Assembly: GCA_020536535.1 (NCBI GenBank)
Contig: JAHLWZ010000753.1
Span: forward strand, 1 to 53,673
DNA from: Pelomyxa schiedti
Lineage: Eukaryota; Protista; Evosea
Length of the DNA stretch: 53,673 bases
Direction: 5' to 3'
This document shows, piece after piece, positions 982-25,361 of the stretch. Made by a program: the position numbers and the translations under genes. The notes beneath the pieces were generated by a model that made no database searches, was not told where the DNA came from, and saw only the letters and a program-made list of their open reading frames with translations. Numbering within the stretch: position 1 is the first letter of the stretch; the number at the start of each line of letters is the position of its first letter.

Positions 982-1413
982 GCCCGCCTCGAACCAAGAA
1001 AACCCCGTAAATAATTTCGGATCAGGTGTAGATGTGCCGACGTGGTTGGTATTGGTGGGAGTGACGATGTTTCTCACTCGGTTGCCCTCTCCCTCAAGTT
1101 CCCCAAGTCCCAACCATTTCCTCTTTCTTAATCTGATGAAGCTACACCAACAATTGTAACTCAATGGACCCAATCCAAACTCAACTTCAACCTAGACCTT
1201 CTTTTTCTCCTGTTGATAGTGGTGCAGAAGCGGCTATTGATGCTGATGGTGACAGTGGTGGTGATTGTTACAGCAATAACAATTGTGATGGTGTGGCAAT
1301 GGCAATGGTGATGACAGTGATGAACCACAACAACCACAACCCATTAGACAAATATTGAATGCAGCACCCCCACAAAGGTCACAAAGAAGAAATGCTGGGG
1401 CCACTTCTTGGTA

Positions 1414-4589: not shown

Positions 4590-4820
4590 CGGTGGCTCAA
4601 TAATTCAAAAAAGTGGAATTTCTGAGACAATCTTCAAGACTTGATTGAGTTTTTTTGCCCCGAAACTTGTGTGCAGGGTTTTAGAGCTGGGATGCCTCTG
4701 TTCGGACAAAAAACAGGCCCATTGTGGTGTCGAAGGACAGTACTATCGGTTGTACTGTCTCGAAGCGTACTCTAAATGCGTTTTGCCTCGTCGAGGAACC
4801 ACGCAAATTAAAAAAAAAAT

Positions 4821-5261: not shown

Positions 5262-8200
5262 TCAAAGCTTGGATGATGAAGCGTTTGCAGCAACACCAGC
5301 CACTGTGGGTGTCTTGAAGAACTGTTCAAGGGTCACATTAAGCCCAGCAAGCAACATCTCAGATGTTATCCTTGTCATGTGCATCGAATTGCCACCAGCT
5401 TCAAAGAAGTTGGTTTTCACACCACCATTGAACCCAAAGACCTTCTTCCAGAGGGCAAACACAACCTTCTCCTTCTCAGTGGATGGGGGTGTGTGGTCTT
5501 CAGCACCTGAACTGTGGACTGCTGCAGGTTTTGACAGGGCATTGCGTTGGACCTTTCCAGAGGCACTCAGGGGCAGGTTTTGCATCAGCACAATTGAAGT
5601 GGGAACCATGTAACGCGGAAGCCTGTCTGAAAGGAAAGCCACAAGGTCATCTGCCATGCCTTGAATCCGAATGACCGCACCCGTTCCAACTTTCTCGAAA
5701 CCCTCATCAAGTATTTCCTCAGTGGGCACAACATAAGCAGCAAGGAACTTGTCACCGGGAGTGTCCTCCCTGAGGGTGACAACAGCATCTTTCACGAATG
5801 GGTTCGAGTGCAGGCACTCTTCAATCTCACCGAGCTCTATTCTCAGGCCGCGGAGCTTGACCTGGAAGTCGGCCCTTCCAACGAATGCGAGCTCACCGTT
5901 CGGAAGGAACCTGCCAATGTCACCGGTGCGGTAAAGCTTCCCTTGGCACGGCAGTGCAGGGACAGACACGAAGTGTTTCGAGTTGAGTTCTTCCCTGTTC
6001 ATGTATCCCATCCCCACAGAGGTGCCTCCGATGAACATCTCCCCGACGACACCCACGGGAACGGGTTGCTGATTCCTGTCGAGCACGAACACCTTCACGT
6101 TGTCGATCGGTCTGCCAAGGGGAACGACGTGACTGGAAGAGTAGAGTGTGTTCCTTTGTGCAAGCGCACTGAGGCAGTCAAAAGAGGTTGTTCCGCACGA
6201 GGCTTCTGACGGACCATACACGTTGATGAGCTGAACTTTATCCCCAAAAGTGTCGGTGAATCTGGCAACATCCTCCCACAGAAGTGCATCCCCTCCTGAA
6301 TAAACAAGCTTCAACGAGGAGGTCATCTGTTTGACGTCGGGGTGCGTTCGAGCAACGCTGATGAATTCCTTCAGAACCGCGGGCACAAAGAAGATCCAAG
6401 TGATTCGTTCGGAGAACACGAGCTGCAACAGAGCTTCAGGATCCATGTCAGCACCAAGAGGGCACAGTATACCACAGGAACCAACAATGAGAGTGAAGAA
6501 AATGTCAGCCACAGAGGCATCAAAGTAAAAAGGTGACTTGACGAGGAAGCGCGATTCTGACGTGAGTCCAAACTTCGATGTGAGCCACAGACCGTGGTTG
6601 ACAGCACCAATGTGGTGGTTCACAGCCAACTTTGGCTTCCCAGTGGATCCAGAAGTGAGGATTGCATAAATCGGTTCCTGGCCAGTCTTGATCACGTGTG
6701 GTGGGTTGCTGGTCGGCATGTTCTCCCAGAGGTTGGAATCTTCCAGGACTGAGATGGCGCGAGGGGACCCACTTGGAAGGCACTTGGAGAGTGATCCCTT
6801 CGAAAGGAGGACGAAAGGAGGTTGGGAGTCGGCGAAGACGCTCGAGAGGCGGTCGCTGGGAGACATGGGATCGAGGGGGATGTAAGCAGAACCCGCCTTG
6901 AGAACAGCGTAAATCGCAACATACATCTCGATTGACCTCTCGGCAATGATGGGGACGAAGACACCAGGACCGACCTTGCCGGTTGCGATCAGGTGGTGCG
7001 CAAGTTTGTTGGCCCTGCTGTTCAGCTGCTCGTACGTCACCGTTGTCTCCAGGAACTTGAGTGCTGGTGCACTCGGCCTCTCTGCCGCATTCGCTTCGAA
7101 GAGGTGGTGCACTGCCACTCCGCTTCCGCTGTGATCCTTCTCCGTACAGTTCCACTCCTCCAGCTGCATCGTGGCCTCTGCTTGTGGAACGACAGTCAAC
7201 TCTGAGAGTTTGAGATCAGGTGAAGTTACAATGCACTGACAGAGAACTTCCATGCTTTTGGCCATACGAGCAATGGTGGAGGCATCGAAAATATCCTTGG
7301 CGAACTCCCAGTACATTTCAACATCGCCTCCGTTTGGCAACGCTCTTGCAAACAGTGTGAGGTCAAGCTTTGCAGTACCGTGTTCGCGCTCCAAAAGCTG
7401 TATTTCTTCCACTCGTTGCACGCCGTTCATCTTGAATCCCGAGTCGAACATCTGCCACTCGTCCATCACGAACATTGCTTGGACGAGCGGCTGCACCTCC
7501 AGGCTCCTCTCCACGTGAACGTGCTCGACAACCCACTCGAACGGCACATCCTGCGCAACCTGGGCTGCGAGCATCTTCCGCTTCACCTGCTCCAGGGTGG
7601 TTGTGAATGCCTGGCTCTCGTCCACGCGCAGCCTGATGGCAAGGGTGTTTACGAAAAACCCAATGATTCCCTCCACTCCGCCATAGTGCCTGTTCGCCGT
7701 AGGTGTGCCGACGACGATATCCCCATGCACCGGCGATGATGCCGAGCCATCATCGGCTTGTTGCGCGGCGCACTGCTGCCAGTTTGGGGAATACCGGTGC
7801 AAGAGAACCTGGAACACCGCAAGCAACGTGACGAAGGGCGTTGCATTGTGCCTGCGACCAAGGTCGACGAGTGCGGCGAACAGGGAGGATGGGAGGCGGG
7901 AGAAATGGGCACCGAGGGCGTAAGTCCTGGCCTGGGTCCTGGGGCGGTCCAGAGGGAGGTCACAAACTTGTTTGACATCTTTGAGCTCCTTCTTCCAGTA
8001 AGTGATCTGCTTCTCTGCTTCGGGGTCCTGCATGAACTTCTGTTGCCACAGCGTGAAATCCGCATACTGCAACGGTAGGGGCGGAAGAAGAGCTGTCGAA
8101 GTTGATGTGTGTGGGGGGACACTGTCGTTGTACAAGTGAGCAAGCTCTTTGATGAAAACAGACAAGGACCACCCATCTGAAACGATGTGGTGCATGGAAA

Positions 8201-11200
8201 TGAGGAGGCCGTGGGTGTTTGTCCCGAGGTGGCAGAGCACAAGTCTGACAAGCGGTCCTCTCTGAAGGTCGAAGGCTTTGCCAAGCTCTTGCACGACCAT
8301 TTTTGATAACAATCCGTCTTCTTCCTCTCTGTCTCCTGGGAGCTCAACTGTTGTCATCTCAAAAGCAGTTGCTGCTTCCTCCTCTGGTAAAATGCTTTGG
8401 TAGGCACTTGATGGGCCATCAATGAACCTTGTCCTCAAAGACTCGTGGCGCCTCACGAGGCACAAGAGTGCATGGCGCACCAGCTTCTCGTCCACAGTGC
8501 CCTGAAGCTTCATGCCCAGGCCCATGTTGTACTGCGTCAATCCAGGTTTGAGCTTGTCGAGGAAGAACAACCTGCTCTGAGCAAATGAAAGTGGAACTTC
8601 TGGCGGCCGGGGGGCCACTGCCGCCGTGATCAAAAACTTCTTGTCAGAATCAGCAATGTGCGCCCTTTCCTGCACAAGTGCCGCAATGCCTGCAATTGTT
8701 CGGCCTTCGAAGAAGTCCCTCAGCACAATTCCTGGCACCCCTCTCCTGCGTGCAACCGCCAATGCTCTCATGGATTGAATAGAGTTTCCGCCGGCATCAA
8801 AGAAATCGGTGTGTTTGCGCAAGCGAGACGCAAAATTGCTGCTGGGAGCACTTTCTTTCAGACACTCCTGAATCAGCTTCTCCAAAGCAGACATGTTCGA
8901 GTCCTCAGCTGCATCGGCACTGGCGTTGCTTTCACAAGAGCGGTAACCTGTTGCGTCGCTGGCAGCTGGTTTGGGCAATGCCTTTCTGTTCGTCTTCCCT
9001 GCTGAAGTCAAAGGGAACTGTGACAAAACGGTGAATGTGCTGGGTACCATGTACGAGGGCAATTTGGACTTCAGGAAACCAGAAAGTGTAACCGGGATAT
9101 TTGGCAAGCACGGTGCGTTGGTGGCAGTCCCTGCCATCGTCAAGGTCAGGTACGCAGCAAGGAACTTGTCACCGGGAGTGTCCTCCCTGAGGGTGACAAC
9201 AGCATCTTTCACGAATGGGTTCGAGTGCAGGCACTCTTCAATCTCACCGAGCTCTATTCTCAGGCCGCGGAGCTTGACCTGGAAGTCGGCCCTTCCAACG
9301 AATGCGAGCTCACCGTTCGGAAGGAACCTGCCAATGTCACCGGTGCGGTAAAGCTTCCCTTGGCACGGCAGTGCAGGGACAGACACGAAGTGTTTCGAGT
9401 TGAGTTCTTCCCTGTTCATGTATCCCATCCCCACAGAGGTGCCTCCGATGAACATCTCCCCGACGACACCCACGGGAACGGGTTGCTGATTCCTGTCGAG
9501 CACGAACACCTTCACGTTGTCGATCGGTCTGCCAAGGGGAACGACGTGACTGGAAGAGTAGAGTGTGTTCCTTTGTGCAAGCGCACTGAGGCAGTCAAAA
9601 GAGGTTGTTCCGCACGAGGCTTCTGACGGACCATACACGTTGATGAGCTGAACTTTATCCCCAAAAGTGTCGGTGAATCTGGCAACATCCTCCCACAGAA
9701 GTGCATCCCCTCCTGAATAAACAAGCTTCAACGAGGAGGTCATCTGTTTGACGTCGGGGTGCGTTCGAGCAACGCTGATGAATTCCTTCAGAACCGCGGG
9801 CACAAAGAAGATCCAAGTGATTCGTTCGGAGAACACGAGCTGCAACAGAGCTTCAGGATCCATGTCAGCACCAAGAGGGCACAGTATACCACAGGAACCA
9901 ACAATGAGAGTGAAGAAAATGTCAGCCACAGAGGCATCAAAGTAAAAAGGTGACTTGACGAGGAAGCGCGATTCTGACGTGAGTCCAAACTTCGATGTGA
10001 GCCACAGACCGTGGTTGACAGCACCAATGTGGTGGTTCACAGCCAACTTTGGCTTCCCAGTGGATCCAGAAGTGAGGATTGCATAAATCGGTTCCTGGCC
10101 AGTCTTGATCACGTGTGGTGGGTTGCTGGTCGGCATGTTCTCCCAGAGGTTGGAATCTTCCAGGACTGAGATGGCGCGAGGGGACCCACTTGGAAGGCAC
10201 TTGGAGAGTGATCCCTTCGAAAGGAGGACGAAAGGAGGTTGGGAGTCGGCGAAGACGCTCGAGAGGCGGTCGCTGGGAGACATGGGATCGAGGGGGATGT
10301 AAGCAGAACCCGCCTTGAGAACAGCGTAAATCGCAACATACATCTCGATTGACCTCTCGGCAATGATGGGGACGAAGACACCAGGACCGACCTTGCCGGT
10401 TGCGATCAGGTGGTGCGCAAGTTTGTTGGCCCTGCTGTTCAGCTGCTCGTACGTCACCGTTGTCTCCAGGAACTTGAGTGCTGGTGCACTCGGCCTCTCT
10501 GCCGCATTCGCTTCGAAGAGGTGGTGCACTGCCACTCCGCTTCCGCTGTGATCCTTCTCCGTACAGTTCCACTTCTCCAGTTGGTGTCTCTCAAGCACTG
10601 AAATGGGGAACATGTTTGAGATGCTTTGTGATGGGACCTTTGTAACTGCTTTCATCAGTGCCTCAATGTTGAGAGCCATTCTTTGGATGGTGGACTGGTC
10701 AAAGACGTCTCTGGCAAACTCAAACTCCATGTGAAGCTCCTTGTTGACAACGTAACAATGCAGTGTCAAGTCAAACTTGGTGACTGGAGCCTGCACACCA
10801 CTCAATTGATGTGCTGACTGGATTCCTTCCAAGGAGAAATTGTTTGGATTGTCGAAGTCCCAGTCATCCATGACGAACATTACTTGCACCAGTGGCTGTA
10901 TGTTGAGCTTGCGTACGACTCCAATTGCTTCAACAACCCAGTCGAAGGGAATGTCTTGTGCTCCTTGTGCTGCCAAAACCTTTTCTTTGACCTGTGTCAG
11001 CACAGACCCAAAGTCTTTGTACTCTGGGATCCTGAGCCTGATGGCAAGGGTGTTGACAAAGAATCCAATGAGAGAATCCACTCCGGGGTAGTGTCGGTTC
11101 GCTGTTGGAATCCCCGCAACGACGTCACATTCCGCATCTTCTTCTGATGGTGGTGATTGAAAACGTTGGGAATGGAGATGAAGCAGAAGCAGGAACACAG

Positions 11201-14200
11201 ACAGAACTGTCATGAATGGGGTCGCATCAGAGCAAGAGCGGCCAAGTGAACACAATTCTCCAAAGGAAGCAGACGAAATAACATGTGTGTGGGTACCTGC
11301 TGCATACGTGCGGTGTTGTGCTCTGGGCCTGTCAAGCGGAAGATCGCACACCTCGGGTGCACCTTCCAACTCTTTCTTCCAGTAAGATAGCTGCACGTCT
11401 TTCAACTCGGGTGACTCTAACAGCGCTCTTTGCCAGAGGGAAAAGTCTGCATACTGGAAGGGAAGTGCTGGCAGAGGTGACGGCGCCATGGATTTGTCCC
11501 CTGTTGAAAGTGCCAACTCTCTGTTGTAGTTGTAGGAAATTTCTTTTAGGAAAGCAACGTAAGACCACCCATCGACAATGATGTGGTGAGCATTCACAAA
11601 CAAGATGGTCACTTCCTTGGACACTCTGAAAAGAGCCAATCTCAACAGAGGGCCAGTTTGGAGGTTGAAAGGTCTGAGAACCTCCTTTTTGCAACCCTCC
11701 ATGATCCACTCTTCCTTCTTTTGTTGTTCATCGTCTTGAAGGCCAGGGTAAGCAAACTCAGAGATTTCAAACCCTTGCTGGGCCTCTTTGGGTGGCAGAA
11801 TCAGCTGGTGTGGGTCGTCATCTCCGGAAACGACGAACCGTGTCCGAAGGGATTCGTGCCTCTGCACAATGGCGAGCGTTGCTTGTTGGAGAAGAGGAGC
11901 GAGAGGGGCAGACCCTTGCAGCTCGAGAGCGCCCCAAGTGCTGTACTGCACAGAGTTAGGTTCGAGTTGGTCAATGAAGAAGAGCCGCAACTGTGAGTAC
12001 GAAAGTGGAACTTTGGGGGGCCTCTGCATTGCATGTGGAGCTTGAATAGCCACGGCAGTTCTTAATGAGATGTGCTCTGTCATGGTACGAATCGTTCTCC
12101 ACTTGAACAAGTCCTGGATTGTCACCTTCCAGCCTCTCTCATTTGCACAAGCGATAAACTTGATCGCTTTGACCGAATCTCCCCCAGCTTCAAAAAAGTC
12201 TTCATCCAGTGTCTGTGGTGGAGCAGTGATGGCCTCACACCACGACTCGTAGACAACACGTTGCTCTGGTGACAGGAACTCTTTGTTGAGTTGTTGTGGT
12301 TGTTGCACATTTCCTCCCACTGATGATGCTGTCTTTGGTTTGGGACCAACAAAACCTGTCGTGCAGTTGACAATGGATGTTTTCAAGGAAAGCCCAGCGC
12401 AAATCATGTTTGTCAAAGATCCCACTCCTAATGGTCCAAAGTCGAACAGCTTCACCTCGGTGCATCCACCCTTGAGTGAAATTGCAGCCCTGTTGTTGTG
12501 TGTTTCAGGTGACGAAAGGGATGAGTGGGTTCTTACTTGACACAGTCTGGCCAATTGAAAGAAAGCTCCAGGCCATCTCTCACGATACGTGTAAAGATAC
12601 TTATGCTGTCTTCCTAAGTGTATTGCTTAGAGACCAATTTAAAAAATCCAAGTTGAGAAGGCGAACATACTTGAGATAGATCAGTCAACTTGCTTGAGCT
12701 GATCACTGAAGGATTGTTTGGCACTGGAGCCAACACTTTGCCAAAGCCACCAGACTTGAGATTGCGCAGTAATTTATCAGTGGGGCTGTGGGTGTAAAAC
12801 TTATTGTGAAGTGGAAAGACAACAGGTAAGGGCGAAGTCTGATCAGGCAGAGCGGATTTAAGTTTTGCTATGCTTGTTGGGTGTCCTGTGTGCACATCAG
12901 AAAATTATTTTCTCATACTCCAACTAACCAGAGATTTCTGTTAAATCGGGACCCATGTTGATGCAGGCATGAAGTGGAGCATTTGGGCATTCAGTGTTGA
13001 TGGATTGGAGTGCCCTCTGAACGACTTCTTCCGGGGCTGTTACTGTGGCAAGGCACGAGTTGGTGAAGACATCTTTCCCCCACTGTCTGATATACTCATC
13101 AATAAATTCAGCAAAGCACAACAGCTGACAAAAAGAAATCAACGCTGAAATGGCTTGCAACTGCTTGAGAGAATCTGGAAGAAAAATGTGGAATCAGACT
13201 TAAAAAAAGGAAGACAGCCACACTGACCTGCTCTGCTCAAGACAACGCATGAGGTCTGCCCTGAAGAATACCCAAGCAAAACGTCAAATGATCTGAGGTA
13301 AGTCATAAATCGATTGTTTCCGTCAAGATCATAATCGTCATTGCCAGTTGACAGTGCGGAAGCAATGAAGCATGCAACGTTGTAGAAAGTACACAGAGAA
13401 GCAAGAAACAAGCAGGAAAGTACTTCATTGCTGGGGCAGCTTGATTCATTCTGCACCCTGGTAAAAAAAGGGAGAAGGTTGAGTGAGATTGTAGTAAAAA
13501 AGATTTGCGAAAGTGAAAATACCATGAATACAAATCAACAGAACCCCCCGATCGGAAAAATTGATCCAGAACTGGGTGTTGGGAGCGGAGTTTGTCAAGT
13601 GTATCACGGTGTATGGCCGCCAACGCGCACAGTGAGGATGATGCTCCATAGAGCCACTTGTCCACCAAGGGGAACATGTTGCACAGCATCCTCAACTTGC
13701 CAATCAACCATGCTCTGATGTCTGGATCGGGGCTGAAACCACCAACTACTGCAATGCGCTTGGTTCTTTGGCACTGAGGTTCACCAAGAGGTTGAGTCAC
13801 AGATGGTGTGGTGGACACTGGAGTATCTTGTGAGGTTGTGACTTCTGGTTTTTGTGAGGGTGCTGTCAGATTTACGGGTTGTGGCTCAGCTGCTGATGAC
13901 ACTTTCGAATGTTCGAGAACGGCTTTTTCCATGGGGGTGCGCTTTGGAATGTTGGGTGGGATGGTGACGGTGGTCCCTTTTGGCTCTTCTTGTTCACCTC
14001 TCAGGGTACTGATTTCCGAGGCCAGCTCCCCAATTGATATGCTGCTCAGTAATTTCAGCGGTGAAATGTTAACACCAAGCTCAGACATTATCCATGTCCG
14101 CAAACTCGTTGCCACAAGGCTCCCGATGCCTTGCGATGCCAATACCATGTCTTCTCCAATGGACTGCTCCTCAATGCCCAGGGTCTTTGCCACACGCGCT

Positions 14201-17200
14201 TTCAGGAGGGAAAATACGGAAATTTCTCCAGCAACTGCCTTGTGTGCATTTTCATCAACGATATGATTTTCAGAAAACCTGGCAAGAGAAAGGGTGGTTT
14301 TGAAGCCCATGCAAAACAGGCTATCGTCAATGGAGAAGAGTGAAACTGGGGAATCCGATTCTTTCCTTGAAAGAATAGCATAAAGGCAATCAAGAGAAAC
14401 TGTTGCAGAAACCTGGCTTATGCCATTGGCAGCAAGTGACACTGCTGGCAAGGGAGATGTGGTCAAAACTCCTGTTTCTCCGATCGCACCCCACTGAACA
14501 GAAAGGGCAGGCAATCCAAGGTGATGCCTGTACTGAACGAATCTGTCCATAAAATAGTTTCCCGCAACGTACGATGTTTGACCATCTATGCCAAGCAGAG
14601 AGGAGATTGAGGAAAACATCACGAAGTGCTTGACTGGATGTGAGAGTGTGGCCTTGTGCAAATGCCATGCACCAATGAGTTTTGGGAAACAAACACGTGT
14701 GAACTTCTCCAAGGTGAGGTTGTAGAGAGAGCAATCCCCATATAAAGTAGCACTGTGGTACACTCCTTCCACTGGTGGCAATTCGGCCTCAATCACCTTG
14801 AACGCTGCGACAACTGAATCAAAGCTGCACACGTCGACGGAGAGGCAGAGAACTTTGCACCCGTGGCATTTCAACCAGTCGATCGAGTGTTTTTCAAAAC
14901 TGGTCTTTGGTCTCCCGTCACGGGATGCAAGGGCAAAGTTCCGTGCACCGTGGTAAAACAACCACTTGGCAACCAAAAATCCAAAGCCATTCAATCCACC
15001 AGAAACGAAGTAAGACGCATTCGCACTGCACAACCAACTGCTGCCATAGGCGCTTGGGAGCAGTTCCAACTTCTCAACTGGTCGTTTCATGGAGATGGAT
15101 ACTGCTCCTCTCTGATCTGGCTCAGAGAGCTGATCCAATGCTTCTTGGATGTGCGCAAGATCATACGATTGTACTGGAATGACGCCAGCCAAGGCCGATA
15201 CAACTTTCACGATTTCAGGGCCAAATTCATCAAATACCATGTCATCTGGAATGCTTGAGAGTTCGACAACTTGAATGGACTGGTTTTCAGTCAGTAGACA
15301 TCTGGGAAGCTGTTGTCCAGGAACGAGTTGAAGGAACCTTCCATTTCTTGCCAGGGTTTGAAGGGACTCGTCAGCAAGCATTCCCCCAAATGCATTCACA
15401 ACAATATCCACACCACGACCGCAAGTTATTTCGTTGATCTTGTCATAAAACTTTGGGTCATTCCCAGCAATGACATTTTCCAATCCAATCACTTCCCTGA
15501 GGTACTGCGCCTCATCCTCAGAAGAGGCTGTGGCCAACAATCGCAGCCCAAGGGACTTGGCAAGGTGAACAACAGCCAGACCCACTCCGCACGAAGCGGA
15601 ATGAACCAAAATACACTCCCCTTTGCAAGCCCTCGCACAGTGGACAAGCGAGTAAACAGCAGTCCACGCAGGAATCCCCAAAGCGGAAGCTTCTTCCAAC
15701 GAGACATTTGTTGGCTTGGGAAACACCGAATGGCAGTTGCAAATCAGGTGCGAGCACAGAGCTCCCAATCGGGGCATCACGATGACTTCATCCCCAGGCT
15801 TCACGTGAGTGACTGCACTTCCAACACGCTTCACCACACCGGATCCTTCCAATCCAAGCTTCCCATACTTGTGCCATTGCCCTGTGGCCGTTTCCACGTC
15901 GAGCAGTCCCTTGGAGATGAGGAAGTCCTTTGAATTCAAGCCGACGTGCTTCATCTCTGTGCAAACTTCGGTTGGGGCCAGGGCGCAGCCAACATTTATC
16001 CTCACAAAGCGAGGCGGGGACCCGGCGGAATCAAACTGGACCTCCCACCCTTCCTCCACTTGAACTGGTTCGGGTTGCCAATCAAGTCGAGAGATTGATT
16101 CCTTGTAGTCACCGATGTTCACTCGCACGCAGAACCGTCGGTTGTTGCTGATGCAAACTTCGGTTTCGAGTGGATTGTTCCACCCATGGAGTGCTTCTTG
16201 AACGATGTGCGTTTTCCAAGTGCTTTCCTCGTCACAAGGGTCGAGGTCGATCACCTTCAGGTTATGTGCCGTTTCTGTGGTGGCAACTCGGGCCACTCCT
16301 CCCAAAGAGAACAAAGAAACTGCTGGTGTGTGGCAACGAGCCATCCTGGGATCGTAGACTCCCGTTGTCACGATGAGCATCCGGCAGTGCAAATCAACTT
16401 CGCTCAGGGCCGTGGACAAGTAAGCGATACATAACGCACTTTCAACTGAAACTCGTTTGAGTTCTTCGTCAACAGGTTCCGCTTTTGTGTAGTGTTCTGT
16501 GGGCCACGCGTTGACAACCTCACAAGCGGTGGGTTTCCCAATCGATTTTATCAACTGAACCCAATGGTCTTTGTTCAAGGGATCGATGCAAATGGTACTT
16601 CCGTCAGCTGTTGTTTCGTACTTCGGGCTTTGCCTGACAGAGATCGCCTTCTCAAAACGAGATCTCAGGGAGGAAAGGAGAGACTCACAAAATTCATTCC
16701 CACAAGACAGAAAGATCAAAACTCCTTGCTTATTCCTGGCTTCGGCTTCATTCTCATCAGGAGAACTCTCAATTGGCACAGCGAGAGGTAGCTCAATCCA
16801 CTTTTCCATGCCCAGTGATACGTTTGGGATTTTATTTGAAACGGCACTCAGCCTCAGATTCTTGATGGAAATCAGTGGCTTCCCAGTCATATCCATCAAG
16901 ACCGCGTCGCCAATCATGGACTTCTGAGGAACAAAATGTGTTATTTTGGTGTGGCACCAAAACGATGAAAATGTGCGGGCTGCTGTTGTTGGTTTTTGTG
17001 CAAGAAACGATGTGAAGGCGAGTTCGATCCCTTTGGAAGCACCTGTGTCAGAGACAACAGCCGAAAAACCTGAGCTGTGCAAACGCTTGATCCATTCATC
17101 CCTGGGAATGCACACGTGATTCCTGTCTGTTGGGTCGTTTTCCCACCATTGATCAAACAAGCCAAATACGAAGTTGAAGAACACGGACTCTTTGTGGGTT

Positions 17201-20200
17201 GGCTCGGTGAGAAGCAGCACACCACCAGGAGACAGAGCATCGTAAATTCTGGAGAGCACATCTCCCAACACTGGCGCAACATGAACAACAGAAAAAGCTA
17301 TCATCACGTCCACGTCTCGCAGATCCTCGGGGAATGGCTGAGAGATATCAAGTGCACTGCATTGGACGAATGGGAGGGGAGCGAACATCTCTTTGGCTTT
17401 GCTGACGAAGAGGGGCGAGACATCTGTGAATATGTACTCCACCTCGCATCCACGATCGTGGGCTTCTTGGCAAATGGGAAGAAGCTGCCTGGTAGCTCCG
17501 CCAGCGCCCCCGCCGATTTCCAGAATCCTGATTCTCTTTCCACGTTGCAAGAGCTGTCCAAAAACTGGGAGAGACGCTTTGGTGAGGTTGCATGTCACAG
17601 ACTCGTTGTAGAATCTGGAAAGTTTGTCGTCTTCCAAAAGAGAAGTCGAATTGCTGAAAAGGTCGACCAGTTGCCTACCCACAGTGTGGACCAACTCTGC
17701 TTCAATGTTCATCACCTTGAAGGGATACAAAAGCACTTCAGATGTTTGGCTATCCCCATGGAGACTTTGATGCCAACTGATATATTTTCTCTTGCTTCGA
17801 CTCCAATCTGTGGTGCTTGAAGCAATGGCCTGACAGAACTGGGCAGAGTAATGCTTGCACAGCTGCACCAACTGCGCATTTTCTTCAAGAGCCAAATGCA
17901 AGCGCTCCTCCTCAATCACGTTGTGTTCCGGAATGAACCTGCTCTCCTTGAGGTCCACGCAAAAATCTTCTTTGCTTCCTCCCTCCGTTCCAAGTGGAGC
18001 AAGTATCTCAAGATAACCGAGAGACGAGGGAAGGAGAATGCTCAAACCACGAAGGTCGGGGAGACCCAACAGCCCACCGATGATGCACTGAAAGCACGCG
18101 TCCAACACTGCCGGATGAACTGCTGAGTTTTTTGCGACTGAGGCAAGCGCGGCGTTGCTGAATTTAATTTGACCAAGTGCTTCATTGAAGTTGGTGTTTT
18201 CAACAAAAATCCTGGATATTGGAGCAAACAGCGATTTGTAATTCAACCCCATCTCCGCGAAAGACTTGTATATCACTGAGTGCCCTTTCATCAGTTTGCA
18301 TATTGCTTTGAGTGTGTCGATGTTTGTTTCGGGCAAAGCTATTGGTTTGGGTTCGGCTATCAATTCTATTGTGCACGAGGAACGCTTTGAAAGGGTTTTT
18401 TCCTGCTCGGCTTTCGTGTGCACTTCGAATCCCATTTGTTTCGATGTTGGGTGATAGTCTGTGACAACGCATTTGAACTCCACGTACGAGTCGGGGGATA
18501 GCACGACAGGACTGTGAAACATCATTTTTGTCACGGAAACTTGGTTTGTTCTCCAGATCTCCCTGGCAGCCAGTGTTGCCAACTCTGCATAAAATGCACC
18601 GGGAATCACAATGTCCTCTCCAGTGCTTATCCTGTGCTCAGAGAGCCAGGGGTACAGGTTCAGGGCAACCACGTTGCTCCAAGATGGAACCGGGCTATCA
18701 TCACGCAACCCCAAGAGGCTGTGTGTGGCATTCAGCCCACGTTTGTATGTACTGAAGGACTTTGGTTCCATTATCCGAACGGTGTTTTGCCACACCGGCG
18801 CGCTGGGTATCTTGACCCACCTCGACTTGTCCTCTTCCGCGTAAGGAGCGAGTGGGTGCTTGCTGACGTTGTGCCAGTTCAGGCTGGAGATGCCGTTCAC
18901 GTACAGAGTGCCAAGGTTCGACAGCATCGTCAAACGCTCGGGCTTGTTTCGCTCGATGGAGTGCACAATGACCGTCGGGTTCTTTGGCGTTGATGGTGCG
19001 GTGGTCGAAAGGTACACGGAAAGGACTGGGTGGTTGGCAAGCTCCACAAACACGTTGAACTTCTCCTCGAGAGCGCAGAGAACCGAAAGGTAAAACAGGA
19101 CGCTGCACCTCACGTTCTTCCACCAGTATTCTGGCCCTGGCGGTTCCGTCATAAATTTGCCCAACACCGTGGAGATTATCGGGATCTTTGGATGCGGTGC
19201 AGGGTTGAGGCCTTGAAGCTCCTGAATCAGCTGCTCTTTGATCTGGTCTGTTTGGTAACTGTGGAACGCGTTTTGTACGTGCAGGAACCTTGCGAACTTC
19301 CCCTGCGATTTAAGTTTTTGCTCCAAAGAAGCCAGTGTAGCAGGGTCCCCTGCTAAAACAACCGAATCGGCACTGTTTACGGAGGCGATGTCCACCCCAG
19401 TCACGTTGGAGATCAGTTCCGTTGCGTCCGAGAACGACATGCTGATGGCAAGCATCCTCCCTTTCCCGCTCAACGCCTGTTGCAGGCGAGACCTCACGCT
19501 GATGACGAGTACGCCTTCTTCCAACGTCAGGTAGCCGCTCACTACTGCTGCTGCCACTTCTCCGACGCTGTGTCCGACGACGGCATCGGGAACAATTCCC
19601 CAATGCTGCCACACTGCGTTCAAGCCGATCTGGACAGCAAAGATCAACACTTGGGCGTACTGTGTCTGGTTCACGTGCGAGTCCACCTCGGCTTTGTGAA
19701 GTTCCTCTATCACCGACCACCCCATCACTCTTCTCCCAATGCTGTCGACTTGTGTAATCGCGTCCCGAAATATCACGTCTTCAGAGAAGAGCTGTCTTCC
19801 CATTGCGAACCACTGAGGCCCCTGACCAGAAAAAACGAACAATGTCTTGGAGTTCTTCGTTGAGAGAAGTTGAGATGCCCCAACCTTCCATTTTGCATCC
19901 ACTTCTGCTTCAGCTTTGGGATTTTGTATGAAACTGTTCAAGGCGCTAGATATGTCCTGTGAAGTTTGCCCCAGAACTGCGAGGCGCTGGGAATAATGAT
20001 TCGTGCGTTTTCCAGCACTGTAAACGATCTCTGTCCATCCACTTTTGCTCACTGACAGAAAGTCGACCCACCTTTGCGCGGATGCTGCAAGTGCAGCACT
20101 GGTGTGTGCAGACACCGGCAGAAAGTAGAATGGTTTTCCACCAGAAGCCATGTCGGAGGGGATCGGCAGCGATTCTACAACAAGGCCATGATGGACAGGT

Positions 20201-21650
20201 GTTTGATGCTCCTCAACGACCACTGTTGCGTTGCTGCCTCCAAATCCAAATGAATTGGCAACTGCAATCTTCTTGTTTGTGGTGATCTTGCTCCACTGTT
20301 CCCCTTTCCATGAGACAGAAAGGCTTCCAAAGTTGATGTGTGGATCAACAGGTACAACGAGTTGGGGAAAAACTTCATCATGCTAAAAGTGGGTCAATTT
20401 TGGGTTTTTTTTTTTTTATTTTAATGCAAACCTGCATCATCAGAATGATTTTGGTGAGACTTGCCAACCCAGCACACGCCTCAGTGTGACCAATGTTTGC
20501 TTTCACTGAACCTATGAAACAAGGACCTCTTGCTCCCGTAGCTTCCTCACTGAAAACTCTCTTCAGAGAGTCTACCTCAATCGGATCACCCACTGGTGTT
20601 CCAGTGCCATGAGCCTCGACATATGAAACGTTGGCAGGGTCCACTTGTGCCAATGAAAGAGCTTGCTGCAGAACAGAGACTTGACCACTGCACTTAGGTC
20701 GATTAATGAACTGTTTGCTGCCGTCATGGTTGGTGGCTGTGCCAGATATTACACAGTAGATATGATCACCATTGGCAATAGCATCTGGTAAAGGCTACAT
20801 TTTGAAAAAAAACCAAAATAGGAGAGAAGAACACAGTGGGTTGGAAACGTCTTATTAAGTTGAAACATACCTTTAAAAAGAACGCAGAGGTGCCTTCGGC
20901 CCTGACATATCCATCCGCGTTGGAACCAAATGTGTGGCACTTGCCTGAGGAACTTGTCATTCCTGCTCGAGAAACAGAAAGCGAAAACTGTGGCAGCAGC
21001 ACTAAGTTCGAAGCAGCAACCAACGCCGAGGCACAGTCTCCGGCCCTGAGGCTCGAGCACGCAAAATGCAAAGCGACGAGGGAGCCACTGCAGGCAGTGT
21101 CGACGGTTACACTCGGTCCCTTGAAATCAAAAAACCACGAGAGACGGTTGCACAGCATGGACAGAGCCACTCCGTTGGCAGTGTAAGGAGACACGTCGGG
21201 CTCCGTCATAAGTGCGATGTTTTGCCAATCGATTCCGAAGCTGGCAACGAAAACGCCGGTCGAGTTGTCACTCCCGCCGTGAGGAAGGAGGTCTCGGTCG
21301 GCCACGCTCGTTGGGAATGTCTCGCCGGCGTCAGCCAAAGCTTCGCAAGAGACTTGCAGAAGTTGGTGCTGCAAGGGGCCAAGGAATGAGGCCTCGCGAG
21401 GCAGTAAACCGAAGAACGCGGCGTCACAGTGAGTGGCAGGATCACTAGTGCCCGCGAATGGTGTTTTAATCTTGCCGAGAGCACAGTGGACTTCTGTATT
21501 GAACCTGTGAGATGGAACTTTTTGGATGGCGTCGGAACAGGTGTGCAAGAGGTCATAGAAGTCGTCTATGTTTTTCGCAGTGGGAAATCTGCAACTTGTG
21601 CCCGTGACTGCAACCAAGAACCTCTCCGTGCTGCTGGAGTGTCGGCTCAT
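5262..21650 (-). CDS. Hybrid PKS-NRPS megasynthase, ~5,332 aa: KS-AT-DH(cMT)-psiKR-ER-KR-ACP-AT(SAT/FAS-like)-T-C-A-T-C-A-T, C-terminal SKL
   Basis: Exons 21650-20871, 20794-20432, 20382-13523, 13457-13228, 13174-12929, 12885-12671, 12613-12537 and 12489-5262 (sum 15,999 nt); all introns GT..AG and phase-compatible. Motifs: KS DTACSGS / EAHGTGT / NIGHTE / NSFGFGG; AT GHSVG, NAFHS; DH EHRISTGEDIVIP, LDACFQ; MT LEIGGGAGG; ER HSASCGVG; KR SGGLNGFG, GQTSYVAGN; ACP GIGSL; second AT GYSSG; T GGDS, GGNS, GGNS; C HHIIVDG, HHIVSDG; A TSGSTGKPK, YGPSE, YRTGD, QVKLRGLRIELGEIE. Confidence 0.9.
5737..7156. repeat. Intragenic duplication copy (A-core of NRPS module 2)
   Basis: Matches 9154-10573 at offset 3417. 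No mismatch seen, and the alternative-frame ORFs are identical in both copies. Confidence 0.95.
9154..10573. repeat. Intragenic duplication copy (A-core of NRPS module 1)
   Basis: Matches 5737-7156. Confidence 0.95.
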
Positions 21651-21941: not shown

Positions 21942-24900
21942 ATGGGCAACACCCCACCACAGCCGGGCATCACCAACATTGCAAATCTCCCAGGAGTGGT
22001 CCTACCCCCCAAATTGAACCCGGCCCCACTTCCGACTACCACCGCAATCGCTTCGCCAGACGTGTCGGAACCCACCACAGCCGCCTCCGCTGTATCCGCT
22101 GTGCCCCCGGGGCTCTCCAACGTTGAGAGGGGCCTCGCTACCGTCGGCGATCTCACGCTGCCGCTACCGATCGTGCCTTTCGCCCCCGTCGCCGTGATCG
22201 GCGCCGCCGTGAAGCTGCCCCAGATCAATGGGTGGGACGACGCGTGGACCGTGTTTTCCCAGGGCCTCGACGTGATGACTCGCTGGGACTCGACCGACCC
22301 GCTGCTGGTAGGCTCTCGCGGCTTCATCGAGACGGCCGAGGAGTACGACTACAAGTTCCTGGGCAGCAAGCACCCCCGCATGGAGGACCCGCAGGCGCTC
22401 CTGATCAAGGAGCTGGTGTGGAACGCGCTCGAGGACTCTGGCTACTGCCCCTCGATGTTGGCCACGATGCCAGGCCGCGTCGGCTTATACGGCGACCTCA
22501 ATCCGTTCTACTCGTACGAAATGATCTCCCACGTGATGAAGGGGTTTGACGACATCTCCGTCATGACGCCGCAACTGCTCTTCACTTCGTCCTACACCGT
22601 TCCCTTCAAGATCCTGGTTGGCGTAGCCAACGGCATTCGCGCCCACGGGCCAGTCCTTCACATTTCCAGCGCTTGCAGCACTTCGGCTGCGTGCATGTTG
22701 GCTGCTTGCGACGCCCTGCATTCCCGGCGCATCGAGATTGGCATTGCCACCGCCGCTACTGTGGGACACCCTCGTCGTCCCATAACTGGTTACAGCAAGG
22801 AATCCAAGGGGCTTTACAGCGTCGATGGCTTCGTCAGGCCCTTTGAAGCCAGGGCCTCGGGCTTTGTTCCGTCAGAGGGAGGTGCTGTGCTGATATTGAA
22901 GACCGTGGAGGCTGCCTCGCGGGACAACGACGTGATACACGCCGTGATTGATGGGGTGGGGGTTTGCTCCGATCCGTCCGTCCTGCCCTCGCCCGACGCA
23001 ATCAGCGCCACTCTGGTTGCAAAGTGCATAGTTGAGGCTATGAGCACCGCCGGGGTGAAGAGCAGCGACGAGATTGGCTACGTGGAGTGCCACGGGTCTG
23101 CCACGACAGTCGGAGACTTTTCTGAGATAGTAGCACTCCGGGCGGCATTGCAACATCCAACAAAGTCGAGGTTCTGCGCTATTGGTGGAAGTAAAGCCAA
23201 CGTTGGTCACTTGGGTGGGTGCCCTGGCCTCGTGTCAGTTATGAAGGCAGCCCTCATTCTCAAGTACAACTTCATCCCACCTTTGGCAAACTTTGAGAAC
23301 CCTAGCCCTATCACAGACCACATACTCAAGCAGCCAGGGTGCCCTGTGTTCCTACCAAAGGTTGGACACACCCCTGCGACCCCAATTACCAAAATTGGAG
23401 TTCAGTGTTCTGGCCCTGGAGGTGGTTACCACTGGATCCTGTCCAAACCTGCTCCAATGCCCGCATTTGTGGAATCCACTGTTTCACGCCGGACTTTCAT
23501 TTTCTGCACCTCAGCCAAGACTTCCACTGCAAATGTCACACTATCTGAAAACACGACCAAGCTAATCTGTGACAAGCTTCAACGGCCAGATGGAATCGAA
23601 TTTGCACTTAATTCAGAGTGGACTCTGCAAACACGCAGGGAATACTTCCTTGAAAGGAGCTCTGTGGTTGTAACTCTTTCCTTGGGTGGTATGAATTTCG
23701 TTGCTCATAGAAATTTATGTAACTCACCCTATCTCTCACTGGCTATAGATTTCCCACAAGCTGTTGTTCGTGCCTTGGCTCCTGTTAGGAATAGTGTCGC
23801 CAACCAAAACGAGGATGTGCGGGTTGCCTTTGTCTTCTCTGGATTTGGGGTTTGCAGCCGGCAAGCAGCTAAAGAGCTGTACCATCAGTATCCTGTTTAT
23901 AGGGAAACTTTTGATCGGTGCAGCAAGTACATACAAGAACTTACGCAAGGAGAACGTAATATCGTGTTGTCAGCAGATGATCTTGCTATTGATTCAGCCG
24001 AAGACACTTATTTCATCGCCCTCGCCTTTGTGACACTTCAGTTGTCCATTTCGCAGCTTCTACTTTCATGGGGCATCGAGCCAACTCAAGGAATGGTTTG
24101 CCACAGCCTTGGAGAATATGCCTGTGCCGTGGCCTCTGGTATGCTGACCATCGAAGAGTGCCTGAAACTCACAAAGCTTCGTTTTGATCTTCTTACAAAG
24201 CTGCCAACGGTTGCCGCTGTAGTTGTGTCAATGGTGGTTGTGAAGAGAGTGTGCGACTTGGTGGCAGAGATCAACAAATTGGACGGTGCGGCTTCTTCAG
24301 ATGACCAAATTGAAGTGACGGTGATGAATAGTCCGACAACTTGCATGGTTTTAGGGCCCCATGTCAAGGTTGATGCATTACTTCTGAAGCTGAAAGGAAC
24401 CCCCTGCAAGACTACAACGTTTGCACCCACTCCCTCGCACTCGAAAAAGGTGAGCCCTGTTCTGCAGCAATTCCGCGACGCTTTCGTCGGAATGAACATC
24501 CCGGTGCGCTCAGGAAAGTACAGATATATCAGTACTCTGAATGCGGACTGGGGGAAGCTTGAGGACTTGTCTTCAGCGGACCATTTCTGTGAAGCTTTGT
24601 GCCATCCTGTCCTCTTCCACCAATCCATGCAAAAACTATTCACCTCTTGGTTGGCCGAGAGTGCTGCCGCGCAAGATTCCCAGAAAGTGAGGAAGATGAT
24701 TATATTTGAAATCGGAGCAAGCTTATCAACCCATATTCATGATATTGCATATGCTGAATGCGGAGAACTTCCCAGCGACCAAGCACCCGCCAGTGTGTTG
24801 GCACTTCCCCTCTTCCTGCATCAGCGCAACAGCACGCTCAACGCTGCCCAACACTTGTGTGTGCAACTTGGAACTTCCTGGGTGAACGGAGCAAAGTTTA

Positions 24901-25361
24901 GCTGGACAAAGTATTCTGAATCCGCGGGAGGGGCCAGGCGCCATGTGGTTCCGTTGTGCCTGTATCCCTACGAGAGAGTAAAAACCACCTTTGACGTACC
25001 CACCGAGCCACTGTCGAGGGAGGCATTCTTCGAGAAGCTTATGGAAATGCCGCAGCCCGCAAGTGCGCAAGAAACGGCGCCATCAACAACTGAAATCCCA
25101 ACAGTGCTGGGCTCCACTCTCACGCCCAAAGAGGTTGGAGTAATCGCAGAAAAGTGGACGCTTTTCGTTCACACCCCACCCAAGACGGAGGGAGACAACT
25201 TCTTCGAATTTGGAGCAACCAGCCTGACGGCGATGCAAATGATTTCGTCAATCAACAGGGTTCTTGGGTTAACTTTCCAGTCCGTAACCTTCACGGCCAC
25301 AACACCCACTTTTGGAAACCTGGTCCGCGCTTACTCCCAACACAAGGTCTCTCGCACCTGA
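21942..25361 (+). CDS. Single-module type I PKS (KS-AT-carrier protein), ~1,139 aa, intronless
   Basis: KS triad SSACSTS, VECHGSAT, KANVGHLG; AT AFVFSGFG, VCHSLGEY, TPSHS; carrier NFFEFGATSLTAMQM. Pro-rich N-terminal extension. First ATG is 21942 (the ORF-track start is a TTG). Confidence 0.88.
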   Translation: MGNTPPQPGITNIANLPGVVLPPKLNPAPLPTTTAIASPDVSEPTTAASAVSAVPPGLSNVERGLATVGDLTLPLPIVPFAPVAVIGAAVKLPQINGWDDAWTVFSQGLDVMTRWDSTDPLLVGSRGFIETAEEYDYKFLGSKHPRMEDPQALLIKELVWNALEDSGYCPSMLATMPGRVGLYGDLNPFYSYEMISHVMKGFDDISVMTPQLLFTSSYTVPFKILVGVANGIRAHGPVLHISSACSTSAACMLAACDALHSRRIEIGIATAATVGHPRRPITGYSKESKGLYSVDGFVRPFEARASGFVPSEGGAVLILKTVEAASRDNDVIHAVIDGVGVCSDPSVLPSPDAISATLVAKCIVEAMSTAGVKSSDEIGYVECHGSATTVGDFSEIVALRAALQHPTKSRFCAIGGSKANVGHLGGCPGLVSVMKAALILKYNFIPPLANFENPSPITDHILKQPGCPVFLPKVGHTPATPITKIGVQCSGPGGGYHWILSKPAPMPAFVESTVSRRTFIFCTSAKTSTANVTLSENTTKLICDKLQRPDGIEFALNSEWTLQTRREYFLERSSVVVTLSLGGMNFVAHRNLCNSPYLSLAIDFPQAVVRALAPVRNSVANQNEDVRVAFVFSGFGVCSRQAAKELYHQYPVYRETFDRCSKYIQELTQGERNIVLSADDLAIDSAEDTYFIALAFVTLQLSISQLLLSWGIEPTQGMVCHSLGEYACAVASGMLTIEECLKLTKLRFDLLTKLPTVAAVVVSMVVVKRVCDLVAEINKLDGAASSDDQIEVTVMNSPTTCMVLGPHVKVDALLLKLKGTPCKTTTFAPTPSHSKKVSPVLQQFRDAFVGMNIPVRSGKYRYISTLNADWGKLEDLSSADHFCEALCHPVLFHQSMQKLFTSWLAESAAAQDSQKVRKMIIFEIGASLSTHIHDIAYAECGELPSDQAPASVLALPLFLHQRNSTLNAAQHLCVQLGTSWVNGAKFSWTKYSESAGGARRHVVPLCLYPYERVKTTFDVPTEPLSREAFFEKLMEMPQPASAQETAPSTTEIPTVLGSTLTPKEVGVIAEKWTLFVHTPPKTEGDNFFEFGATSLTAMQMISSINRVLGLTFQSVTFTATTPTFGNLVRAYSQHKVSRT

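What the first reader, a model, noticed from the sequence alone, without database searches (positions are those of the whole stretch)
5262..21650. One ~5,300-aa spliced PKS-NRPS megasynthase in a protist-like genome, hidden as several separate ORFs
Seen: the ORF track shows a KS fragment, a 2306-aa PKS ORF, several tiny ORFs and a 2430-aa NRPS ORF. Seven short GT-AG introns (76, 49, 65, 53, 43, 57 and 47 bp) join them into one open frame of 15,999 nt. Established: typical fungal PKS-NRPS hybrids carry one C-A-T module plus an R/DKC release domain. This one has a reducing, methylating PKS, an extra acyltransferase, a leading T and two NRPS modules. Inference: it makes an unknown acyl-dipeptide (lipopeptide-like) metabolite. 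I know of no characterised enzyme with this architecture.
Basis: partly seen in the sequence, partly recalled or inferred. Interest (0 to 1): 0.93.

Follow-up and report, generated by a model that had tools for sequence, protein, structure and literature searches.

The report
Amoeba PKS-transacylase-NRPS fusion enzyme
An oxygen-avoiding amoeba (Pelomyxa schiedti) has one real 5,332-residue gene that joins a fatty-acid-like chain builder to a two-step peptide builder through a fungal-type hand-over enzyme, a layout I could not find described, and it probably makes an unknown fatty-acylated dipeptide.

Summary
Seven GT-AG introns give a stop-free 15,999-nt frame (5,332 aa) in Pelomyxa schiedti. 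A paralogue (about 77% identical, KAH3766393.1) has all seven introns at the same codons, with diverged intron sequence and dN/dS 0.24 across the linker exons. No RNA covered the junctions. The gene is not wholly hidden: the genome paper's Table S3 lists Pelo_9594 from this start to a C-terminal SKL, without comment, while NCBI holds only the NRPS half.

The 'extra acyltransferase' is a SAT / fungal FAS-beta-type transacylase (Ser2732, His2853). The order is KS-AT-DH[MT inserted]-ER-KR-ACP-SAT-T-C-A-T-C-A-T, with no release domain. The genome holds both parent types, PKS-oxoamine synthases and stand-alone SAT-T-C-A NRPSs, so this looks like a fusion of the two.

Most likely SAT moves the reduced, methylated chain from ACP to T0 and two copies of one amino acid are added (the A cores are 98-99.8% identical). 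The chain may then pass to a head-to-head KS-AT-ACP neighbour. Caveats: the ACP motif is GSL where paralogues have DSL, and product and release are inferred. The scan noted SAT-NRPS and PKS-AOS genes elsewhere in this genome before. New variant of a known kind.

The parts
5262..21650 (-). Whole gene, 8 exons, 5,332 aa: KS-AT-DH[MT]-ER-KR-ACP-SAT-T0-C1-A1-T1-C2-A2-T2
   Evidence: Pelo_9594 in Table S3 of PMC8887013
20871..21650 (-). Exon 1 (KS N-part, catalytic Cys187 at 21092)
20795..20870 (-). Intron 1, 76 nt
   Evidence: junction used in Pelo_9594
20432..20794 (-). Exon 2 (KS C-part, His322 and His363)
20383..20431 (-). Intron 2, 49 nt
13523..20382 (-). Exon 3 (AT, DH, MT, ER, KR, ACP, start of SAT)
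18889..19839 (-). Extender AT (GHSVG Ser653, AFHS: malonyl-type)
17983..18723 (-). DH, first about 230 profile positions (His964, Asp1142)
16978..17982 (-). About 335-aa insert with the C-methyltransferase, placed inside the DH double hot-dog
16831..16977 (-). DH C-terminal strands (profile positions 229-276), after the MT
15073..16047 (-). Enoyl reductase in cis (dN/dS 0.16 against the paralogue)
14479..15018 (-). Ketoreductase (Tyr2319)
14008..14208 (-). PKS ACP, Ser2469 at 14121; motif GIGSL where three paralogues have GIDSL
12330..13780 (-). SAT / FAS-beta-type transacylase over six exon pieces (exon 3 tail, exons 4-7, exon 8 head); GYSSG Ser2732 at 13267, PLH His2853 at 12808
13458..13522 (-). 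Intron 3, 65 nt (joins the PKS frame to the SAT exons)
13228..13457 (-). Exon 4 (SAT nucleophile elbow)
13175..13227 (-). Intron 4, 53 nt
12929..13174 (-). Exon 5
12886..12928 (-). Intron 5, 43 nt
12671..12885 (-). Exon 6 (SAT His)
12614..12670 (-). Intron 6, 57 nt
12537..12613 (-). Exon 7
12490..12536 (-). Intron 7, 47 nt
5262..12489 (-). Exon 8 (end of SAT, T0-C1-A1-T1-C2-A2-T2, stop); NCBI's 2,381-aa model starts at the internal ATG 12407
12069..12257 (-). T0 carrier (GGDS, Ser3029)
10578..12011 (-). C1, HHxxxDG intact; nearest solved structures are elongating C domains
8949..10523 (-). A1, pocket code DAAFYGVCGK
8679..8888 (-). T1 (GGNS, Ser4160)
7167..8600 (-). C2, HHxxxDG intact, 44% identical to C1
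5520..7106 (-). A2, same pocket code as A1
5274..5483 (-). T2, terminal carrier (GGNS, Ser5292); no TE, R or DKC domain follows
5265..5273 (-). C-terminal SKL (predicted PTS1 in the genome paper; the paralogue ends in KSS)
9151..10583 (.). A-core repeat copy 1 (1,433 nt; 3 mismatches to copy 2 in the assembly; read contigs show a 22-site variant at 10032-10283)
5734..7166 (.). A-core repeat copy 2
21945..25361 (+). Head-to-head intronless KS-AT-ACP gene (about 1,138 aa; start codon inferred); KS resembles those that follow NRPS modules; its counterpart lies on the paralogue's contig

Best explanation
One nuclear gene of Pelomyxa schiedti encodes a 5,332-aa assembly line, formed by fusing a highly reducing, C-methylating type I PKS to a SAT-T-C-A-T-C-A-T NRPS. 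Steps: (1) the PKS builds a reduced, partly methylated acyl chain from malonyl-CoA on its ACP, probably iteratively (catalytic residues shown; iteration inferred). (2) The SAT (Ser2732/His2853) takes the chain from the ACP and puts it on T0, as SAT domains do between HR-PKS and NR-PKS in fungi (fold and residues shown; donor inferred). This supplies a thioester donor for C1, which looks like an ordinary elongating C domain and not an acyl-CoA starter C. (3) C1-A1-T1 and C2-A2-T2 add the same, probably hydrophobic, amino acid twice (identical pockets shown; the residue is a guess). (4) The acyl-dipeptide stays on T2 and is taken off in trans, most likely by the KS of the head-to-head KS-AT-ACP for one more extension, then released by an enzyme not identified (inferred). 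The product would be a methyl-branched N-acyl dipeptide, possibly ketide-extended.
For: One gene; one DNA unitig spans 11647-14000 and continues far upstream; the intron-3 read-through is not conserved and stops at once in the paralogue. SAT identity: Pfam SAT over cut-off in two family members and 20 bits in the paralogue; language-model hits SAT/FAS AT at 0.96-0.97; Foldseek best hits are fungal FAS-beta and the SATs of CTB1, CazM and PksA, E 2e-6 to 1e-3; Ser/Cys elbow and His conserved. Parent types in the same genome: PKS-oxoamine synthases on C171 and C291; NRPSs starting with SAT-T on C259 and C424, and 13 exon-4 homologues. C1 nearest to Txo1/Txo2, 5u89 and TycC. Identical pockets. The neighbour's KS scores best (185 against 155 bits) with the only KS that follows an A-T module among 142 matches and ranks ClbC and a PKS solved with a peptide synthetase high; its counterpart is 79% identical on the paralogue's contig. 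Precedents: PMC12721105 (SAT takes the HR-PKS starter), PMC3901194 (EasB, EasD, EasC load the T0 of EasA).
Against: No RNA spans any junction; the RNA run covers only A2 and its flank. NCBI holds the NRPS half as a separate 2,381-aa protein. The PKS ACP has GSL, not the DSL of three paralogues, which could hinder priming. Stand-alone SAT-T NRPSs in the genome show that SAT can work without a fused PKS. The SAT model is only medium quality (pLDDT 60). The partner role of the neighbour rests on weak similarity (about 31-33% identity) and linkage. No metabolite is known.
Confidence: 0.6

Rival explanations
1. One protein, but the SAT loads T0 from the acyl-CoA pool (or from another PKS in trans), as the stand-alone SAT-NRPS siblings must. 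The fused PKS is a passenger, is impaired in this copy, or passes its chain straight to C1 in competition with T0.
For: Stand-alone SAT-T-C-A genes and a free 436-aa SAT protein exist; the domain is closest to the fungal FAS acetyl-CoA transferase; the ACP has GSL.
Against: The fusion is kept in two paralogues at dS about 0.8, with all PKS domains under purifying selection (dN/dS 0.09-0.20). The fused SATs share a changed His motif (PLHN against HxAFH in the stand-alone ones), which suggests adaptation to a new donor.
Confidence: 0.22
2. Two transcription units or proteins: a PKS(-SAT part) and an NRPS starting at the internal ATG 12407, as in the NCBI record, working in trans.
For: P0001 is 2,381 aa from that ATG; no junction reads.
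Against: That start cuts the SAT, whose last strand (DFGP motif) lies upstream of it in exon 8. The linker exons are under purifying selection and keep their introns in the paralogue, whose NCBI model is fused. The authors' own table has the KS start and the SKL end in one row.
Confidence: 0.07
3. The module count or order is an assembly artefact of the 1.4-kb A repeat (one module duplicated, or more modules collapsed).
For: Short-read SPAdes single-cell assembly; the paralogue broke at this repeat into C151 and C2062; reads show a bubble that the assembly flattened.
Against: Depth on the repeat is about the sum of its flanks (X1 41.9 against 18.4+20.3; X2 15.6 against 8.9+6.1), and T1-C2 is at single-copy depth. 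C1/C2, T1/T2 and the A-subdomain ends are distinct. The paralogue has its own T1-C2 at 76% identity.
Confidence: 0.06
4. The acyl-dipeptide is released directly from T2 by a discrete thioesterase or hydrolase, or by a nucleophile, and the neighbouring KS-AT-ACP is a starter-supplying or unrelated enzyme. This changes only step 4.
For: The genome has several thioesterase-family matches elsewhere; other family members also end in a bare T; EasA also lacks a TE (PMC3901194).
Against: The neighbour co-occurs at both paralogous loci, and its KS is most like NRPS-accepting KSs.
Confidence: 0.3

Closest known systems
Fungal iterative HR-PKS-NRPS hybrids (ApdA, CcsA, PsoA type)
   Same: Single chain; KS-AT-DH-MT-ER-KR-ACP followed by C-A-T; spliced eukaryotic gene.
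   Different: Those have one NRPS module, a dead ER and an R-type release domain (PMC4994942, PMC3901194), and the ACP feeds C directly. Here there is a conserved ER, a SAT-T0 bridge, two modules, no release domain and an MT inside the DH; the best sequence hits are bacterial.
Emericellamide/beauveriolide systems (EasB HR-PKS, EasD ligase, EasC acyltransferase, EasA T0-first NRPS)
   Same: Same chemical logic: reduced methylated polyketide, acyltransferase, first T domain, NRPS modules, no TE (PMC3901194).
   Different: Four separate proteins, with release as free acid and re-activation to CoA. Here it is one chain, with a SAT-fold transacylase and no ligase. EasC is of another fold, from my own knowledge.
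SAT domains of fungal NR-PKSs (PksA/StcA, CTB1, CazM, benzenediol lactone NR-PKSs) and the FAS-beta acetyltransferase
   Same: Fold, GxS/CxG elbow and His; hand-over of a chain from a FAS or HR-PKS to the next carrier (PMC12721105, PMC3901194).
   Different: Known SATs sit at the N-terminus of a KS and load a PKS ACP. This one sits between an ACP and an NRPS T domain; identity to solved members is only 12-18%.
Bacterial cis-AT PKS-NRPS hybrids (cyanobacterial/myxobacterial type)
   Same: Nearest sequences for both halves (30-37%); some hits combine KS-AT-DH-MT-ER-KR-ACP with C-A (e.g. P0164, P0177, P0197, P0229).
   Different: Apart from the Pelomyxa proteins, only one top hit carries a SAT annotation (P0240, a modular PKS without a C domain). 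All bacterial hits have an unbroken DH.
Pelomyxa schiedti SAT-T-C-A NRPS family and PKS-oxoamine synthases (uncharacterised; KAH3764772.1, KAH3766394.1, KAH3766105.1)
   Same: Direct paralogues of the two halves (PKS about 63-70%, SAT 32-38% identical).
   Different: Unfused; no function known.

Membership tests
Fungal iterative PKS-NRPS hybrid | HR-PKS (KS-AT-DH-MT-ER-KR-ACP) in the same chain as NRPS domains | tested here: met
Fungal iterative PKS-NRPS hybrid | Exactly one C-A-T module directly after the ACP | tested here: not met
   SAT-T0 and two modules
Fungal iterative PKS-NRPS hybrid | Terminal R/DKC release domain | tested here: not met
   The protein ends 40 aa after the T2 serine
Fungal iterative PKS-NRPS hybrid | Inactive in-cis ER with a trans-ER partner | tested here: inconclusive
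   ER matches ADH_N and ADH_zinc_N and has dN/dS 0.16, but the nucleotide motif is altered (SASCGVG); activity not testable
Fungal iterative PKS-NRPS hybrid | KS and C in the fungal hybrid clades | tested here: inconclusive
   Best hits are bacterial; no tree was built
SAT / FAS-beta acetyltransferase domain | Pfam SAT PF16073 at the curated cut-off (22.8 bits) | tested here: inconclusive
   36.2 and 29.1 bits in family members, 20 bits in the closest paralogue; the window's own domain was searched only in exon pieces, without a hit
SAT / FAS-beta acetyltransferase domain | Alpha/beta-hydrolase plus ferredoxin-like AT fold | tested here: met
   Model of the paralogue's domain; Foldseek top hits FAS-beta, CTB1, CazM, PksA
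SAT / FAS-beta acetyltransferase domain | GxS/CxG nucleophile and catalytic His | tested here: met
   GYSSG Ser2732, His2853; invariant G-Y-x-x-G and His in the family
SAT / FAS-beta acetyltransferase domain | N-terminal position before a KS | tested here: not met
   Internal, before an NRPS T domain
SAT / FAS-beta acetyltransferase domain | Acyl transfer to a carrier protein | not testable with these tools
   needs an enzyme assay
Emericellamide-type PKS + AT + T0-NRPS system | T0-first NRPS loaded by an acyltransferase with an HR-PKS chain | tested here: met
   anatomy only
Emericellamide-type PKS + AT + T0-NRPS system | Separate PKS, CoA ligase, acyltransferase and NRPS genes | tested here: not met
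   One chain; no ligase among the ten longest neighbouring frames
Starter-C (Cs) lipopeptide NRPS | First C domain of the starter class, taking acyl-CoA | tested here: not met
   C1 is preceded by T0, is 44% identical to C2 and is nearest to elongating C domains; by best hit, not by tree
Peroxisomal matrix protein (PTS1) | C-terminal SKL with suitable upstream residues | tested here: met
   (paper's score 7.841, 'Targeted')
Peroxisomal matrix protein (PTS1) | Signal conserved in close relatives and pathway partners | tested here: not met
   The paralogue ends KSS and the neighbour SRT

The most novel reading that the evidence does not exclude
This is a working assembly line of an undescribed design. 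A SAT domain hands an HR-PKS product in cis to an NRPS carrier, which is a new route to lipopeptide initiation. The DH folds around an inserted methyltransferase, the two A cores are kept alike by gene conversion, and a KS-AT-ACP partner completes the chain. It is one of an interchangeable set of PKS, SAT-NRPS and oxoamine-synthase parts in an anaerobic amoeba, and this copy may be sent to the anaerobic peroxisome (that last point only about 15%).
Probability: 0.4. Interest if true: 0.8.

Novelty: new variant of a known kind. Interest (0 to 1): 0.63.

Why it matters
For natural-product enzymology it gives a natural in-cis PKS-to-NRPS junction that uses a transacylase plus spare carrier instead of direct ACP-to-C hand-over or a CoA-ligase detour. 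That is a testable, portable interface, and both unfused parents lie in the same genome, so the fusion event can be studied. An MT inserted into the DH fold was absent from all the bacterial relatives compared. For protistology it shows a sizeable, intron-bearing, bacterial-type PKS/NRPS repertoire in an anaerobic archamoeba; the main texts of the two P. schiedti papers and the Mastigamoeba genome paper do not mention polyketides. It gives a first chemical hypothesis for a host that keeps several prokaryotic endosymbionts.

Tried and rejected
For the whole SAT domain I used the public paralogue protein P0002 and a 212-aa open stretch on C424.

No result: Pfam on single SAT exons. A SAT profile search in the 5.8-billion set. 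phmmer over 1.84 billion representatives gave only three P. schiedti proteins and one unrelated repeat protein. A metagenome contig scan confirmed nothing; the genome-contig scan could not run on that alignment. The look-up of encoding contigs had no record for P0001 or P0002. RNA run X4 has no coverage of the junctions. No fungal-type FAS central domain in G000, so no resident donor for the SAT was found. Paper searches found no description of Pelomyxa PKS/NRPS, of SAT-loaded NRPS T domains, or of an MT-split DH (open-access library only).

Rejected: a symbiont or contaminant contig (spliceosomal introns; diphthine-synthase-like, F-box and ankyrin neighbours); intron-3 read-through as the true PKS end (not conserved); the 22-site read variant as coming from the paralogue (84% identity either way). 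The 'A-end+T2' line was mis-framed and is ignored; one search gives 73% identity.


Full report
Source. G000 has 52,367,397 bases in 5,337 contigs, which matches the single-cell assembly of the anaerobic amoeba Pelomyxa schiedti (52.4 Mb, 5,337 scaffolds, SPAdes, 7.43 introns per gene; PMC8887013). Paralogous proteins carry that name in NCBI. The window is contig C753. Its other genes look like host nuclear genes (diphthine-synthase-like, F-box, ankyrin).

The observation. Checked exon by exon, the eight exons sum to 15,999 nt, hold no stop in phase and create none at split codons. Three independent lines support the splicing. (a) A paralogue on C151 has introns at all seven orthologous codons, with different lengths and about 50-58% identity, against 77% for the gene as a whole. 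(b) Its public protein KAH3766393.1 (P0002, 4,010 aa, cut by the contig end) matches exons 1-8 back to back. (c) The six pieces between ACP and T0 are under purifying selection (390 codons, dN/dS 0.24), whereas the read-through of intron 3 stops at once in the paralogue. At DNA level one unitig of an independent assembly spans the whole linker. The one RNA run covers only the A2 end, so the 3' part appears in an RNA library but no junction was tested. The genome paper's Table S3 lists Pelo_9594, 'non-ribosomal peptide synthetase', beginning with exon 1, spliced at introns 1 and 2 as here, and scored as ending in SKL (the stored text is cut after about 400 residues). NCBI instead holds a 2,381-aa protein from an internal ATG in exon 8. 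So the one-gene model is public but unremarked, and the public records disagree.

Anatomy, PKS half. KS (Cys187, His322, His363), malonyl-type AT (Ser653, AFHS), DH (His964, Asp1142), MT, ER, KR (Tyr2319) and ACP (Ser2469) are present and under purifying selection where measured (dN/dS 0.09-0.20). Two points were not in the finding. First, a DH profile built from 74 homologues matches positions 1-233 before the MT and 229-276 directly after it, so an insert of about 335 residues carrying the MT splits the DH. The same holds for the paralogue P0125, while every bacterial homologue with a DH has an unbroken one. Second, the ACP reads GIGSL where three paralogues read GIDSL; this may hinder priming or be a one-base error, and it lay outside the stretch laid on reads.

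Anatomy, bridge. The roughly 390 residues after the ACP are a SAT / fungal FAS-beta-type transacylase. Pfam SAT scores over the cut-off in two family members and just under it in P0002. Language-model neighbours are SAT clusters at 0.96-0.97. The only PDB sequence hits, though weak (E about 0.6), are FAS-beta and align on the nucleophile elbow. A model of the paralogue's domain (pLDDT 60) retrieves fungal FAS-beta and the SATs of CTB1, CazM and PksA ahead of FabD. The Ser/Cys elbow and the His are conserved. The family was found only in P. schiedti at this sensitivity.

Anatomy, NRPS half. T0-C1-A1-T1-C2-A2-T2 with both HHxxxDG motifs and both catalytic lysines, then a stop 40 residues after the T2 serine; there is no TE, R or DKC domain. 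C1 is nearest to elongating C domains, so it should need a carrier-bound donor, which explains SAT-T0. The A cores are a 1,433-nt repeat with 3 edge mismatches in the assembly. Read contigs show depth of about two copies, and a variant of 22 sites at 10032-10283 at roughly 1:1, most simply the true difference between A1 and A2 (about 98% identity; 8 residue changes, all upstream of the pocket). The paralogue has the same two-module plan (its T1-C2 is contig C2062, 76% identical) and again one A sequence for both modules, 80% identical to ours. C1 and C2 are only 44% alike. The duplication is therefore old and the A cores are homogenised within each gene, which points to gene conversion (inference; the paralogue's 100% may be partly assembler output). 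The pocket code DAAFYGVCGK is the same in all four positions (the last residue is cut off in P0002). From memory it resembles Ile/Leu-type codes; the residue is not settled.

Origin. The genome holds both parents. The same PKS ends in a PLP oxoamine-synthase-type domain on C171 and C291. NRPSs that begin with SAT-T occur on C259 and C424, exon 4 has 13 matches in the genome, and a free 436-aa SAT protein exists. The megasynthase is best read as a PKS whose release domain was replaced by a SAT-first NRPS (direction inferred, no tree). Both halves are bacterial-type by best hit, at 30-37% identity.

Neighbour. About 295 nt upstream, head to head, lies an intronless KS-AT-ACP gene with Cys/His/His and AT Ser intact. 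Its counterpart (79%) lies on the paralogue's contig, 11 kb after that gene's T2 end. Its KS scores best with the single KS that follows an A-T module among 142 matches and ranks ClbC, and a PKS deposited together with a peptide synthetase (entry 8xjz), near the top; the megasynthase KS does not. This suggests, without proving it, that it accepts the chain from T2.

Mechanism. Shown: domain order, catalytic residues, selection, equal pockets. Inferred: iterative chain building; SAT transfer from ACP to T0; two rounds with one amino acid; removal in trans. The precedents are SAT-mediated transfer from HR-PKS to NR-PKS (PMC12721105) and the EasB/EasD/EasC/EasA route to a T0-first, TE-less NRPS (PMC3901194). 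I put one gene at about 0.9 and the in-cis SAT mechanism at about 0.6. The main rival is loading from acyl-CoA with the PKS bypassed. The SKL end is real and was predicted as a peroxisomal signal by the authors, but the paralogue and the neighbour lack it, so I give peroxisomal location about 15%.

Comparison and verdict. It works like an emericellamide-type system folded into one chain. It is not a member of the fungal PKS-NRPS family, which has one module and a release domain (PMC4994942; PMC3901194). All parts are known domains. The ACP-SAT-T-C junction and the MT-split DH I could not find described, in a library limited to open papers. Earlier scan notes had already flagged the SAT-first NRPSs and the PKS-oxoamine synthase on other contigs, and four features of this window; I tested those I use, except the A-T-KS-AT-ACP note. 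Verdict: real, new variant of a known kind, interest 0.63.

Noticed in passing
G000:C171:53358-62858 (L007) and C291:143990-152584+ (L011): Paralogous HR-PKSs end in a PLP oxoamine-synthase-type domain (Pfam Aminotran_1_2), candidates for one-enzyme sphingoid-like amino lipids; the C171 protein P0125 shares the MT-split DH.
   Followed up: partly
G000:C151:1-1360 and 93605-94964; C2062: C151 begins and ends with the same A core, and C2062 (T1-C2) overlaps both ends by 121 nt, so the paralogous locus closes into a ring of about 97 kb in the assembly: a circle, a tandem unit or a scaffolding artefact. The middle of C151 could not be fetched.
   Followed up: partly
L004/L005, G000:C151:18008-20951 (-): A KS-AT fragment 88% identical in AT to the window's PKS, with three stops in the KS and an early end: a pseudogene convergent with the KS-AT-ACP gene.
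   Followed up: no
L018 (C259:16400-23176), L015/L016 (C424:44676-53550): NRPSs that begin with SAT-T. C259 has a Cys nucleophile (GYCGG); C424 ends in a T-R domain and has an intron-free SAT core.
   Followed up: partly
G000:C573 (P0245, P0123): A stand-alone 436-aa SAT protein and a partial duplicate: a possible trans-acting loader.
   Followed up: partly
L017 (C1326:1672-6577): Two near-identical C-A-T ends in inverted orientation on one 8-kb contig; possibly an amplification chimera.
   Followed up: no
G000:C351, C176, C3950, C3873: Further KS-AT-ACP relatives of the head-to-head neighbour (34-54% identity).
   Followed up: no
G000:C561:21307-25231: Two ACPS/PPTase matches, candidates for priming the carriers.
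   Followed up: no
window 3705-4630 (-): Fragments resembling a Tc1/IS630-type transposase (helix-turn-helix piece and a DNHRAH motif) just downstream of the gene; read by eye.
   Followed up: no
window 127-1173 (-): Spliced gene resembling diphthine synthase (Dph5); read by eye.
   Followed up: no
window 34742-35518 (+), 39680-40765 (+), 38693-38792: F-box gene, ankyrin-repeat gene and a 100-N scaffold gap.
   Followed up: no
window 8123-8198 and 9154-9188: Short stretches in C2 and at the end of the A core are shared with other, much deeper contigs in all four runs: conserved NRPS motifs of other loci or organisms.
   Followed up: no
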